A stretch of 59,792 nucleotides of DNA from Parasitella parasitica NRRL 2501 (Eukaryota > Fungi > Mucoromycota): contig MU619238.1 in the NCBI GenBank assembly GCA_025201805.1, positions 452,644 through 512,435 of the forward strand, given 5' to 3'. Position numbers and translations under genes: made by a program. Positions 46,601-51,526 of the stretch are shown piece by piece (position 1 is the first letter of the stretch; every line of letters starts with the position of its first letter). The notes below the pieces were generated by a model that had not been told where the DNA came from, did not search any database, and saw only the letters and a list, made by a program, of their open reading frames with translations.

Positions 46601-47482
46601 GTCAGCCATGAGCAAAAGTCTGTCTTGACAGCCGTGCAGCTGCTATGGGTCAATTTGATTATGGATACATTTGCTGCCCTTGCCTTGGCTACGGATCCCC
46701 CTACCGAAGAATTGCTAGAACGCGGTCCCGAATCTCGCTCTTCTCCCTTGATTACTTTCAAGATGTGGAAAATGATTATAGGTCAAGCAATCTTCCAAAT
46801 CGTGGTTACCGTGGTTTTGCTATACAGCGATATCCTTCATTACCAGCCTGACGACCCCATCTTACAAACCATCGTCTTCAATACCTTTGTTTTCTGTCAA
46901 ATCTTTAACGAAATCAATTGCCGTCGTATTGATTCAAAATTGAATGTATTTCACAACATCTTTGCCAACAAGTTCTTTTTGGGCATTTTCTTTTTATGCA
47001 TTGCTCTCCAAGCTATCATTGTTAACTTTGGCGGAACGGCTTTCCAGGTAACTCGAGTGGATGGTGTTGCATGGGCTATTTCTATATGCGTCGGTCTTTT
47101 ATCTTTACCTATTGGTGTTCTCGTTCGTTTAATCCCTGATGAATTCTTTGCATTTGTGTTTGTCTTTAACCCTGCTGCTCGTCAAAGATACTTGGGTGGC
47201 ACTAATGACAGTGCATCTCCTAGTGTTTATGTTGCTGGCAATGAGCGAATTGCGTGGAACAACAACGATGGCAGTGACACTTATAACAGCCCATCCTTAT
47301 CCAACACAGGCAAATCAAAACAAGGAAAGCAAGAAGTCGATCAAATCGAAGACGTTGCTCCTGCTTATACTCCACCTATAAATGAGAAGGTCACCAACGG
47401 CTCCCAGGAATCGTTTGAAGATCAAAATCAAGACACTGTTCTATCCTCAGGCTCTTTAGATTTATCTCAACGAAACAATTAG
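43671..47482 (+). CDS. PMC1: P2B (PMCA/Pmc1-type) Ca2+-transporting ATPase, 3 exons
   Basis: TGES, PEGLPLAVT, phosphorylation motif DKTGT, KGASE, MVTGD, GDGTNDGPAL and QLLWVNLIMDT. Confidence 0.96.
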
Positions 47483-47540
47483 AGCATCTCCAACGAAGAT
47501 GCTAAACAAAAAGCCATTTAAAGCACAACCCGGAAATGTT

Positions 47541-48510
47541 NNNNNNNNNNNNNNNNNNNNNNNNNNNNNNNNNNNNNNNNNNNNNNNNNNNNNNNNNNNN
47601 NNNNNNNNNNNNNNNNNNNNNNNNNNNNNNNNNNNNNNNNNNNNNNNNNNNNNNNNNNNNNNNNNNNNNNNNNNNNNNNNNNNNNNNNNNNNNNNNNNNN
47701 NNNNNNNNNNNNNNNNNNNNNNNNNNNNNNNNNNNNNNNNNNNNNNNNNNNNNNNNNNNNNNNNNNNNNNNNNNNNNNNNNNNNNNNNNNNNNNNNNNNN
47801 NNNNNNNNNNNNNNNNNNNNNNNNNNNNNNNNNNNNNNNNNNNNNNNNNNNNNNNNNNNNNNNNNNNNNNNNNNNNNNNNNNNNNNNNNNNNNNNNNNNN
47901 NNNNNNNNNNNNNNNNNNNNNNNNNNNNNNNNNNNNNNNNNNNNNNNNNNNNNNNNNNNNNNNNNNNNNNNNNNNNNNNNNNNNNNNNNNNNNNNNNNNN
48001 NNNNNNNNNNNNNNNNNNNNNNNNNNNNNNNNNNNNNNNNNNNNNNNNNNNNNNNNNNNNNNNNNNNNNNNNNNNNNNNNNNNNNNNNNNNNNNNNNNNN
48101 NNNNNNNNNNNNNNNNNNNNNNNNNNNNNNNNNNNNNNNNNNNNNNNNNNNNNNNNNNNNNNNNNNNNNNNNNNNNNNNNNNNNNNNNNNNNNNNNNNNN
48201 NNNNNNNNNNNNNNNNNNNNNNNNNNNNNNNNNNNNNNNNNNNNNNNNNNNNNNNNNNNNNNNNNNNNNNNNNNNNNNNNNNNNNNNNNNNNNNNNNNNN
48301 NNNNNNNNNNNNNNNNNNNNNNNNNNNNNNNNNNNNNNNNNNNNNNNNNNNNNNNNNNNNNNNNNNNNNNNNNNNNNNNNNNNNNNNNNNNNNNNNNNNN
48401 NNNNNNNNNNNNNNNNNNNNNNNNNNNNNNNNNNNNNNNNNNNNNNNNNNNNNNNNNNNNNNNNNNNNNNNNNNNNNNNNNNNNNNNNNNNNNNNNNNNN
48501 NNNNNNNNNN
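47541..48510. other. Assembly gap (970 N); smaller gaps at 2443-2458 and 17656-17665
   Basis: N runs in the sequence. Confidence 1.
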
Positions 48511-49303
48511 AAAACCACATGCACAAATACAACATTCATGAAATCAATTGACAACTTGGTGGAGTACGCTACCAAAATTACCAATATAGGCTCATTGTTT
48601 GCAAACTTTATCATTCTGAAATGTGCAGATGCCAATGAAGATACGCCAATCATTAGTCAAGATTTTGTTTATGCTATATTTTCTACCTTAGCAGGTAATG
48701 GGAGTAGGGCTCCTGAGTTCATCCGTCAATATTTTGAAGAGTTCAAAAATGCGTGCGAGATTGACGAGCAAATTTTAAAATCATTGAAGTCTATTGGTTA
48801 TGCGACTATTCTTTCCATTTCTGCCAAGCAGTATGAAACCCTTATCCGAAATCATGTTTGTGAAGACAGCAACGAGAAACAACAATTCTTACTCCCACCC
48901 TCCACCACTGGATGGATCAGTTAAGGCAAATAAAACCATCATTGCCTATAGAGATGGAAGATTTTCACCTACCATGAGAAGCAAAAGATCTGGACCTACA
49001 AAGACTATCATAAAAGCTCTTCAAAAATGTAAAGAAAATCGTGGTGTTACAGCCCAAATGGTAGACGAATACCTCACCAGTCAAGTCTGCAACAACTGCA
49101 AAAAGAGAAATGTTGAATACGTTGTGCAACGATCAGCAAAGCGAAGAGTACATTCTGTATTACGGTGTCAAGAAACCGCTTGTAATATTTTTTGGAATCG
49201 CGATATAATGGCTGCAAAAAACATCCTCAACATATTTTTATATGCAGCAAGAAACAATGACGCTCGTCTTTCACCATTCCAGCGTTCTGAATCAAAAGAA
49301 TAA
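48511..49303 (+). pseudogene. Fanzor1 (TnpB-like RuvC nuclease), internally deleted and frameshifted
   Basis: The C-terminal frame has IIAY(R)DGRF, SGPTK, VDEYLTSQVCNNC and RCQETAC-IFWNRDIMAAKNI. The preceding frame has a helical N-terminal region (GSLFANFIIL...PIISQDF...YETLIRNH). RuvC-I and the WED region are missing at the junction near 48865. Confidence 0.85.
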
Positions 49304-49480
49304 TTGCAAGCATTGTGTGTCATTGATATTACTCTTTGATACGCCATAGGTATTCGGTTTATCCTATACACCATTAAAGGTGAGTAAAATTGTCCAAAAA
49401 AAAAAGAAAGTATCACCCTCTCACCAATTTTCTTTTAAAATTAGCTCCTCCGTTGGAGATGCTTTACCCTTGCTTAATGT
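49304..49480 (+). ncRNA. Putative Fanzor omegaRNA scaffold plus flank-derived guide
   Basis: Located between the Fanzor stop and the right end. Nested stems 49329-49340 / 49373-49387 and ATAGG 49346-49350 / CCTAT 49363-49367. Boundaries are inferred. Confidence 0.5.
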
Positions 49481-50068
49481 AAATAATGCCAACTTTTTTC
49501 TATTAAAAAATATATCATAAGACACAATGAAAAGCCATATTGATTAGATGCTTAACAAAGCATAATGTGCCCTTGCTCATTATGGTTCTTTTTGTACATT
49601 AGTTTCATTGTGACAAAATGCCGCCATTTGTCGTTTATAACAATGCATACAAGCATAACGTATCCCATTGAGATTCCCCAAGAGAGCCACAACTAGTGTC
49701 CATAACTAGATAATGGCGCCATCGTACTGTTTAGGTTCTTTTTTTGTACCGTAAAACATCATAGTACTGCAGGTATCAATCGCAATGTGGAACAGAGGAA
49801 GGTTAGCTTGTTTACATTTAAGATTAAAAAAGACATTTACTTCAAAATGGAGCTTTCGCCAAAGACTTTCGATTGAAGCAAAAGTCAAAAATTAATTGAT
49901 TTCCACAAAAAAGACTACAAGAAAATGAGTCCATTAACCTCATTCTCTTGAGGGTGTGATGATGGCATGTGCTCTTTGTTGCATATGCTAATGACTACTG
50001 GTCCTATATAAAAAGCTGCTCTTTACCGCTATAGTTTTATAGAATAAATTTATTACAATATACAAAAT

Positions 50069-51526
50069 ATGGATAGTCTTCCATCTGAACTTCTGCTTAA
50101 AATTTTCTCTTATTTGACATTTACTGAGAAACTGAACTGTGCAAGTACTCACAAAGCATGGAAATCCTTGATCCTAAGAGATTGTCTTTATGAAGACTTT
50201 AAAATCGACGGTAGGCTTGAACGTTTGAACAACCATTTCAAAGTGTATGAGACTCAGCAAAGACAGGTGCGTCGTCTGAAGTCAACGTCTATTGAAGCTA
50301 TTGACGTGTTGGCTATACCAGCACAGTTTCCCAATCTCGCAGAATTTAGCTGGGGTATGGCCGAAAGTTATAATGAAGCTTATGATGATGAAGCTGATGA
50401 TGGTGAAGCTGATAAATATGAAGGAGTTGTCAATGAGCAAAATGCGCAGCACTGGAGAAATATCACTAGATTTCAAGAGCATGATCACTGTCCTCTGTCC
50501 GCAGCATTGTTAAAAAATGGTGGACTGTGTAACTTGATTGAGTTGGATATCACATTTTTACGTAGTCGTGAGCAACAGATAATGGACCTGAACTTGTGCA
50601 AGCCAATAATCCAGCAACTTTCGAAAGCTCCTAATCTGAAGATACTCAAATTCAAGAACAGTCCAATGACATTGATTGATTTGAATCAACTACATCTCAA
50701 CGCACAGCAATTAGAGATACTTTGTTTAAATAATATCTCCTTTTGCACTAATGAACATGTTGCCACAACAAAGACTGATGGATTGACGGAGCTTCATATT
50801 TCTAACTATATTCGCAACGACAAGTTTCTGGCGCATGTAGCTGGGAAGTATCCAGATTTGAAAACATTGAAAATCCATGGCAAGAAGAATGATGATGAAA
50901 TTTACGATGAGCAAAATGGTGAAGATTCATTGGTTAAATTTGCTTATAGCCCTCATCTTGAGACTTATGATGTCGACATACACCCAATTACACCGAAAAT
51001 TATGAGAGCACTGGATGCAAACGGAACCAAATTAAAAACGATTAGGATAAAAATGCCTTTTGAAAATCCTCAAGCTCATATGAAGGATTTATTTTCATCC
51101 AACCAAAAAGACTCTGTGGAAACATTGAAGATAGACTTTACATGTGGACCTGATGTTAAAGAAATCAACGTAGTGGAATTTCTCAAATACTTGGAAGATT
51201 TCTCAAGACTCAAGGCTTTAGAAATGGATGGCGTGCACGATGTAAATCAACCCAACCTTAGCTTCCCTTTTTATAAATGTTTGAAGAAGCTCCCACATTT
51301 GGAAACAATCAAGCTGCAATTCTTGACAATAGAGCATGAGCCTTCAGTCTCTCTAATGAAATTTGTGGCGGGTCAAAAGGTCAAGTCAAAGTTGAAAAAA
51401 CTGATTTTGAATGACTGTGGTTACAAAAGCAAAGAAAAACTCTTATCGTTCCTCTCAGAAACATGCCCTAAACTATTCATGCAAAATATAATAATCAATC
51501 GTTATGGCGGAATCTGGCTAGATTGA
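50069..51526 (+). CDS. F-box/LRR (RNI-like) protein, intronless; paralog of 25863..27494
   Basis: MDSLPSELLLKIFSYLTFTEKLNCASTHKAW F-box followed by LRR-like repeats; TATATAAAA near 50005. Confidence 0.85.
   Translation: MDSLPSELLLKIFSYLTFTEKLNCASTHKAWKSLILRDCLYEDFKIDGRLERLNNHFKVYETQQRQVRRLKSTSIEAIDVLAIPAQFPNLAEFSWGMAESYNEAYDDEADDGEADKYEGVVNEQNAQHWRNITRFQEHDHCPLSAALLKNGGLCNLIELDITFLRSREQQIMDLNLCKPIIQQLSKAPNLKILKFKNSPMTLIDLNQLHLNAQQLEILCLNNISFCTNEHVATTKTDGLTELHISNYIRNDKFLAHVAGKYPDLKTLKIHGKKNDDEIYDEQNGEDSLVKFAYSPHLETYDVDIHPITPKIMRALDANGTKLKTIRIKMPFENPQAHMKDLFSSNQKDSVETLKIDFTCGPDVKEINVVEFLKYLEDFSRLKALEMDGVHDVNQPNLSFPFYKCLKKLPHLETIKLQFLTIEHEPSVSLMKFVAGQKVKSKLKKLILNDCGYKSKEKLLSFLSETCPKLFMQNIIINRYGGIWLD

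What the first reader, a model, noticed from the sequence alone, without database searches (positions are those of the whole stretch)
47479..49466. Fanzor (eukaryotic RNA-guided TnpB-like nuclease) carried by a PIF/Harbinger-type TIR transposon
Seen: 23-bp inverted termini (20/23 match, outer 13 perfect, GAGCATCTCCAAC type), TTA on both flanks, and an enclosed ORF ending AYRDG...VDEYLTSQVCNNC...CQETAC..WNRDIMAAKNI. Established: this C-terminal layout (shifted RuvC-II Glu, zinc finger, RuvC-III NRD) typifies Fanzor1; Fanzors are cargo of several eukaryotic DNA transposon superfamilies; TWA duplications with GAGCA-like ends typify PIF/Harbinger. Inference: this is a member of a fungal Harbinger-Fanzor OMEGA family whose intact copies may exist elsewhere in the genome and may be uncharacterised.
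Basis: partly seen in the sequence, partly recalled or inferred. Interest (0 to 1): 0.92.

Follow-up and report, generated by a model that had tools for sequence, protein, structure and literature searches.

The report
Dead Fanzor in swapped Pong ends
This is a broken copy of a fungal jumping gene that once carried an RNA-guided DNA cutter (Fanzor1); the family recently changed the transposon ends it travels in, and its transcript splices out part of the right end in a way that could assemble the guide RNA.

Summary
Real, but this copy is dead. In Parasitella parasitica, 47482-49463 is one of about 40 copies of a non-autonomous PIF/Harbinger (Pong-type) element: 24-bp TIRs, 3-bp TWA duplications, transposase and Myb-like remnants with the same ends elsewhere. 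Both junctions exist in independent DNA runs, sister copies fit the gap length, and the empty site aligns to an orthologue: the insertion hit the stop codon of a Ca2+-ATPase and restored it (TAA to TAG). The 169-aa ORF is a chimera across a 1.42-kb deletion that removes RuvC-I. The family is a hybrid: 92-99% identical Fanzor cassettes in Cokeromyces and an unnamed fungus end differently (Tc1-type in Cokeromyces), and only the last ~38 bp here are Pong-derived, so the cassette moved between species and vehicles. A probable RNA run shows a 65-nt GT-AG intron (49380-49444) spliced from the omegaRNA region. In six Tc1-ended relatives, splicing would pair the exon end with the transposon terminus in a short stem; the Pong palindrome keeps that register. 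That the spliced RNA is the working guide is inferred (about 50%). The scan noted this family and the splicing before on other DNA.

The parts
47479..47481 (+). left target-site duplication TTA, overlapping the stop codon of the PMCA-type Ca2+-ATPase gene; the element's first G completes TAG (47480-47482)
   Evidence: orthologues end in SQRNN-stop; orthologue DNA reads AAT TAA
47482..47505 (+). left TIR (24 bp, internally palindromic, Pong/PIF-Harbinger type)
47506..47540 (+). left subterminal sequence shared with the ~600-bp MITE family and with transposase-bearing copies
47541..48510 (.). assembly gap; in sister copies this stretch holds the Fanzor 5' region and N-terminus (about 980-990 nt in the two closest in length)
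48511..48864 (+). Fanzor1 N-terminal (WED/REC-region) fragment
   Evidence: 32% identity, E=4e-17 to an 863-aa Rhizomucor Fanzor
48859..48864 (+). deletion junction (TGTGAA microhomology); ~1.42 kb lost, including RuvC-I D(P)G and two 56-nt introns; shared with three sister copies
48860..49303 (+). Fanzor1 C-terminal fragment: rearranged RuvC-II Glu (49067-49069), zinc finger, RuvC-III Asp (49202-49204), stop 49301-49303
49316..49343 (+). omegaRNA stem-loop 1 (7-bp stem, conserved 14-nt loop)
   Evidence: 93.7% of cells paired, 3 of 7 pairs with compensatory change across 9 loci
49344..49379 (+). extra hairpin and linker ending at the splice donor (TACAG in the family, TAAAG here)
49380..49444 (+). 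65-nt GT-AG intron; contains the Fanzor-cassette/Pong junction near 49436; its acceptor AG lies inside the right TIR
   Evidence: (joint only in the probable RNA run X7)
49441..49463 (-). right TIR, terminal base lost; forms a hairpin on the + strand RNA
49464..49466 (+). right target-site duplication TTA; the flank beyond it would be the guide
   Evidence: guide position inferred from known Fanzor1 loci
49479..49560 (+). 82-nt GT-AG intron in the unique right flank, spliced at low depth: transcripts run out of this copy's right end
   Evidence: depth 5, X7 only

Best explanation
A dead, internally deleted copy of a non-autonomous hybrid transposon in Parasitella parasitica. Shown: Pong-type ends and TWA duplications; a Fanzor1 cassette whose consensus keeps the D-E-D triad; near-identical cassettes in other fungi with different ends; a spliced intron in the right end. 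Inferred history: a Fanzor1 cassette, from a Tc1/mariner-ended element, crossed between Mucorales, recombined into a resident Pong element at a 5-bp microhomology inside its 3' intron, and was spread by Pong transposase plus Myb-like ORF1 in trans; transposase and Fanzor then decayed (copies 2.4% median from consensus). Inferred mechanism of the founder: the Fanzor transcript runs through the right end, the intron is spliced, and the RNA folds as SL1 - linker - terminal stem - TSD - flank-derived guide; the nuclease cuts the precisely excised donor site (TAM including TWA) and repair from the sister chromatid restores the element. This copy cannot make nuclease but can still be a 'ghost' omegaRNA source. 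Confidence 0.9 for the anatomy, 0.8 for the swap and transfer, 0.5 for the spliced RNA being the functional guide.
For: Family and TSDs. Pong genes with the same ends: PF04827 in L029/L056, convergent Myb-like ORF1 at C98, C87, C49, C32. Deletion and decay. Fanzor1: (GtFz1 1e-9, SpuFz1 2.7e-9). Swap: Cokeromyces copy 92% identical continues past 49436 into a second intron and ends ...CTG|TA; run X8 shows the same continuation and lacks the Harbinger ends; Rhizopus, Thamnidium, Mucor, Phycomyces relatives end in Tc1-type termini; junction microhomology. Transfer: X8 is 98.6-99% identical to the family consensus while host genes do not lay at 88%; Cokeromyces PMCA orthologue is 71% identical as protein. 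Splicing. Terminal stem in all six Tc1-ended loci after in-script splicing, scaffold 50-53 nt in five, matching the SL1 (7 bp) plus short SL2 layout of solved Fanzor1 omegaRNAs (PMC11423790).
Against: No record spans the gap. X7 is only guessed to be RNA and is held as contigs; spliced contig depth is 60 against about 190 unspliced. No small-RNA or RNP data. CAG|GT is also the ordinary donor consensus, so part of the terminal pairing could be incidental. The PpFz1 omegaRNA contains an AG|GTAAG motif and works unspliced in yeast (PMC11423790 Table S3). No intact transposase was found. Organism C is unnamed, and only its inner 33 nt beyond the junction were seen.
Confidence: 0.8

Rival explanations
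1. The functional omegaRNA is the unspliced RNA: the intron is looped out as a long SL2 (or pairs with the SL1 loop as a pseudoknot), and splicing is incidental or a way to inactivate the guide, as in bacterial IStrons.
For: Unspliced 3' region folds better than shuffles (z=-3.1). The SL1 loop can pair with intron bases 4-14 at 9-11 of 11 positions in Parasitella, Rhizopus and Thamnidium (p 0.002-0.045 each against 646 other GTRAG starts; 76.8% of cells paired). PpFz1 keeps AG|GTAAG in its working omegaRNA. Most X7 contig depth is unspliced.
Against: The pairing register was chosen after seeing the data and is weak in three loci (6-7 of 11). Intron length varies 34-255 nt while the last AG stays 11-12 nt from the terminus in all six Tc1-ended loci. 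Fanzor1 omegaRNAs are reported to lack a 3' pseudoknot (PMC13565253).
Confidence: 0.3
2. The Fanzor was a passive passenger after capture: the Pong-ended family spread only because its ends are good transposase substrates, and no functional guide was ever made from the new end.
For: Most copies have lost large parts of the gene; Fanzor-free MITEs of 586-637 bp with the same ends also spread; no intact ORF.
Against: Nearly all deleted copies keep the omegaRNA end, donor and acceptor (AG in 14 of 15); the new acceptor is used and re-creates a terminal stem in the same register. The 3' bias could also come from closeness to the TIR.
Confidence: 0.35
3. An old, autonomous Harbinger-Fanzor lineage with intact copies hidden in assembly gaps.
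For: Two transposase-bearing copies (L029, L056) carry the Fanzor tail and right end; copies on C45 and C64 have 2.7-3.2-kb gaps.
Against: Only ~38 bp of the right end are Pong-derived; all relatives read in other genera lack these ends; all transposase remnants are broken or split into short frames.
Confidence: 0.07
4. Assembly artefact: two unrelated element ends joined by scaffolding across the gap.
For: 970 unread bases; no contig spans them.
Against: Matching TTA on both sides, flanks colinear with the orthologous empty site, sister-copy spacing within 8-20 nt.
Confidence: 0.03

Closest known systems
Fanzor1 (SpuFz1, GtFz1, PpFz1; PMC10432273, PMC11423790)
   Same: DPG RuvC-I in the consensus, Glu shifted next to the zinc finger, RuvC-III NRD, ~860 aa founder, conserved structured RNA between stop codon and right end with a 7-bp SL1; deleted 'ghost' copies that keep the RNA end
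   Different: Different protein family from PpFz1 by eye (different assembly, no similarity in the omegaRNA letters; not run, as the sequence has no reference here); a spliceosomal intron lies inside the omegaRNA region; no activity shown
PIF/Harbinger, Pong-type (Ping/Pong/mPing; PMC2836001, PMC4561436)
   Same: short TIRs, 3-bp TAA/TTA duplication, DDE transposase (PF04827) plus Myb-like ORF1 in related copies, Tourist-like MITEs
   Different: this family is non-autonomous and carries a Fanzor; only ~175-365 bp on the left and ~38 bp on the right are Pong-derived
MCi-5 of Mucor circinelloides (PMC3627910)
   Same: Mucorales Fanzor1 linked to a Harbinger transposase
   Different: MCi-5 has no TIRs and a 6-bp duplication; here the ends and duplication are canonical Harbinger
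IStrons (10.1101/2023.11.20.567912, PMC13565253)
   Same: one transposon transcript can be spliced or serve as omegaRNA
   Different: [quoted passage not shown]

Membership tests
Fanzor1 | RuvC-I D(P)G motif | tested here: not met
   Deleted in this copy. Present as WAVDPG in the consensus and in six sisters: met for the family, not for the copy.
Fanzor1 | RuvC-II Glu relocated just upstream of the zinc finger | tested here: met
   VDEYLTSQVC, 49067; aligned to GtFz1 and SpuFz1; criterion from PMC10530073, PMC13565253
Fanzor1 | zinc finger and RuvC-III Asp | tested here: met
   PF07282 38.5 bits, over cut-off
Fanzor1 | long N-terminal extension, closer to Fanzor1 than to Fanzor2/TnpB | tested here: met
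   profile hits only GtFz1 and SpuFz1 in PDB; N-terminal fragment matches an 863-aa relative; AlphaFold model failed (pLDDT 34)
Fanzor1 | conserved structured omegaRNA between gene and right end | tested here: met
   SL1 with covariation in 9 loci of 6 genera plus one metagenome contig; no Rfam match
Fanzor1 | RNA-guided, TAM-dependent DNA cleavage | not testable with these tools
   needs RNP assay; this copy cannot be active
PIF/Harbinger (Pong-type) | short TIRs with 3-bp TWA duplication | tested here: met
   this copy TTA/TTA; 12 of 18 sisters exact, 4 more TAA/TTA mixes
PIF/Harbinger (Pong-type) | DDE transposase of the PIF/Pong class bounded by the same ends | tested here: met
   PF04827 over cut-off inside L029 (both TIRs) and L056 (right end), broken; absent from the readable part of this copy and from the longest Fanzor copy
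PIF/Harbinger (Pong-type) | second gene with Myb/SANT-like domain | tested here: inconclusive
   convergent ORF in L056 and at C87, C49, C32; no Pfam hit; Atlas neighbours at 0.90-0.94 are NAM-associated/Myb-SANT-like plant proteins
PIF/Harbinger (Pong-type) | precise excision / empty site | tested here: inconclusive
   pre-insertion state seen in the orthologous locus of GCA_000938895.1; no excision joint in two DNA runs

The most novel reading that the evidence does not exclude
These Mucorales Fanzor1 elements build their omegaRNA with the spliceosome: an intron separates the conserved scaffold from the transposon terminus, and splicing closes the terminal stem against whatever end the cassette sits in. 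The intron is then a free recombination zone, which lets the nuclease swap vehicles (Tc1/mariner to Pong) without losing its guide.
Probability: 0.45. Interest if true: 0.82.

Novelty: new variant of a known kind. Interest (0 to 1): 0.56.

Why it matters
How Fanzor1 moves among unrelated transposon superfamilies while its guide must abut the transposon end is an open question. Here a swap is caught at 92-99% identity, with the breakpoint mapped inside a spliced intron and the new end supplying the acceptor in the same pairing register. It gives a direct test (spliced versus unspliced omegaRNA; TAM before and after the swap from TA to TWA sites) and warns that Fanzor RNAs predicted from DNA or expressed in yeast may be mis-defined. 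It is also a transposon transfer involving a fusion mycoparasite. The copy in this window is itself an ordinary dead element.

Tried and rejected
Transposase inside the Fanzor copies: none; Tc1 transposase pieces in L039, L048, L051 are nested or neighbouring insertions. PF13359 hits lie away from the TIRs. Truncation of the Ca2+-ATPase: rejected, orthologues end at the same residue. Identity with PpFz1: no PDB hit to it; direct comparison left out because the paper's sequence has no reference here. Metagenome scan gave only 27-30% relatives. AlphaFold on a 12-row alignment failed, so no fold search. Rfam: nothing. Loop-intron pseudoknot: suggestive only. Literature searches found no spliced Fanzor omegaRNA and no TIR-bounded Harbinger-Fanzor description. 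Spliced models were joined only inside scripts for folding; the joined search step was left out and pieces were searched by reference.

Full report
Observation. The inverted termini, the TTA on both sides and the Fanzor-like C-terminus are in the sequence. The TIR is 24 bp, begins GAGCATC and is itself a palindrome with a 9-bp stem; the right TIR of this copy has lost its last base. The C-terminal piece matches PF07282 (E=1.3e-9) and GtFz1 (E=3.6e-5); a profile of relatives hits GtFz1 and SpuFz1 at about 1e-9. The genome is Parasitella parasitica: named proteins sit on contigs of the same lengths as G000 contigs.

The gap. No record spans 47541-48510. Three lines support continuity. In two DNA runs the unique left-flank contig runs 45 nt into the element and the unique right-flank contig starts 30 nt inside it. 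Three sisters share this copy's deletion; two of them place the first post-gap base 1037 and 1049 nt from the left end, against 1029 here, the third 1243. Removing the element and one TTA gives a sequence that aligns with the orthologous locus in GCA_000938895.1. The target was the TTAA at the stop codon of a PMCA-type Ca2+-ATPase; the element's first G turns TAA into TAG, so the protein still ends SQRNN as in Mucor orthologues.

The family. The right part has 46 matches in the genome; the TIR 13-mer has 46 hits and the reversed control none. Twelve of 18 two-ended copies have exact TAA or TTA duplications. The longest copy is 3655 bp and encodes only a frameshifted Fanzor. Against it, the window copy lacks about 1.42 kb at a TGTGAA microhomology (48859-48864), which removes RuvC-I and shifts the frame; the 169-aa ORF is a chimera. 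The consensus keeps D(P)G, E and D, has two 56-nt coding introns and would give about 860 aa, with two breaks left at thinly covered positions. Copies are 2.4% (median) from consensus. No intact gene was seen; two heavily gapped copies cannot be judged.

The vehicle. The same ends bound a broken PF04827 transposase (L029), and L056 has transposase, a convergent Myb/NAM-like ORF and the same right end. The two-gene layout recurs at C87, C49 and C32, and 586-637-bp MITEs share the ends. Two genes, short TIRs and a 3-bp TAA/TTA duplication define PIF/Harbinger (PMC2836001). The Fanzor copies were therefore moved in trans by a Pong-type pair that now looks decayed.

The swap and the transfer. Relatives at about 50-55% protein identity in Rhizopus microsporus, Thamnidium elegans, Mucor saturninus and Phycomyces end in Tc1/mariner-type termini (CTG|TA), not Harbinger ends. 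A Cokeromyces recurvatus copy is 92% identical in DNA, follows the window up to 49436, then continues through a second intron to a Tc1-type terminus. Run X8 (organism C, unnamed) holds a 3956-nt contig at about four times single-copy depth that includes the deleted part, is 98.6-99% identical to the consensus over the 930 nt compared, shows the same continuation at 49436 and lacks the Harbinger ends, while host genes do not lay at 88%. A 73% identical metagenome contig shares that continuation, so it is ancestral. The Pong end joins at a TTTTG microhomology and supplies only the last ~38 bp. The Cokeromyces ATPase orthologue is 71% identical as protein, so vertical descent cannot explain the cassette identity. 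The Cokeromyces-type terminus also bounds other Fanzor families in this genome. Direction of transfer is not resolved.

The RNA. After the stop codon a 7-bp stem with a conserved 14-nt loop covaries across nine loci (93.7% of cells paired, three pairs with compensatory changes), as SL1 does in solved Fanzor1 RNAs (PMC11423790). It is followed by TACAG(T) and GTRAG in every locus. In run X7, which behaves as RNA (depth 276 on the ATPase, 2-5 between genes), a GT-AG joint removes 49380-49444; DNA runs lack it. A second GT-AG joint in the unique right flank shows that transcripts leave this copy's right end. In all six Tc1-ended loci the last AG is 11-12 nt from the terminus although the intervening length runs from 34 to 255 nt, and folding the spliced form pairs the exon end with terminus plus TA in a short stem, giving 50-53-nt scaffolds in five. 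In the Pong form the palindrome supplies the acceptor, and the exon's AG pairs with the terminal CT in the same register. I first met the splicing and swap ideas in an earlier scan note (s1-706797) and tested them here; the terminal-stem register is my own observation.

How it most likely works. Shown: ends, duplications, decay, swap breakpoint, cross-species identity, the splice joint (with the caveat that X7 is contigs and its RNA status is a guess). From established knowledge: Pong excision is precise (PMC4561436) and OMEGA nucleases can cut empty donor sites to restore the element (PMC13565253). Inferred: the founder used a spliced omegaRNA with a flank guide to cut precisely excised sites (about 50%). 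The main rivals are an unspliced functional RNA (PpFz1 keeps AG|GTAAG unspliced; a possible loop-intron pairing) and a passive passenger.

Novelty. Fanzor1 in P. parasitica is known, and Harbinger is already listed as a host on the strength of MCi-5, which lacks TIRs (PMC3627910). A canonical Pong-ended family with a mapped, recent swap inside a spliced omegaRNA intron was not found in the papers searched. The scan itself noted this family and the splicing on other DNA of this genome. Class: new variant of a known kind; this copy is dead. Spliced sequences were joined only in local scripts; the joined search step was left out, as was a direct comparison with PpFz1, which has no reference here.

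Noticed in passing
window 47479-47482: The insertion leaves the Ca2+-ATPase protein unchanged but displaces its 3' UTR by about 2 kb.
   Followed up: yes
window 49479-49560: A GT-AG intron in the unique right flank starts 12 nt after the TSD, inside what would be the guide of this copy.
   Followed up: partly
window 50069-51526: Single-ORF F-box/LRR-like gene (485 aa) that is absent from the orthologous stretch of GCA_000938895.1, where the ATPase is followed by the DnaJ gene.
   Followed up: no
L056:4463-4553 (G000:C98): The only place in this genome that keeps the ancestral second intron of the Fanzor end; it sits between the Pong ORF1 and a Fanzor tail, in rearranged order: a possible intermediate of the capture.
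   Followed up: partly
L061, L071, L074, L075 (3' ends): Two tandem introns joined by AG|GT with no exon between them, a possible recursive splice site.
   Followed up: partly
G000, e.g. C39:33219-37625, C64:46540-50374, C68:140969-144715: About 70 TA|CAGT(C/T)GACGAAAC termini, many in 3-4.5-kb pairs that enclose other Fanzor-like matches: further Fanzor families in Tc1-type ends.
   Followed up: no
L022, L024, L026, L036: Copies with TAA on one side and TTA on the other, suggesting recombination or gene conversion between copies, or mis-assembly.
   Followed up: no
window 48861-49407 and 49104-49207: Other deletion forms of the family seen as joints in public runs (the first only in X7, at high depth).
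   Followed up: no
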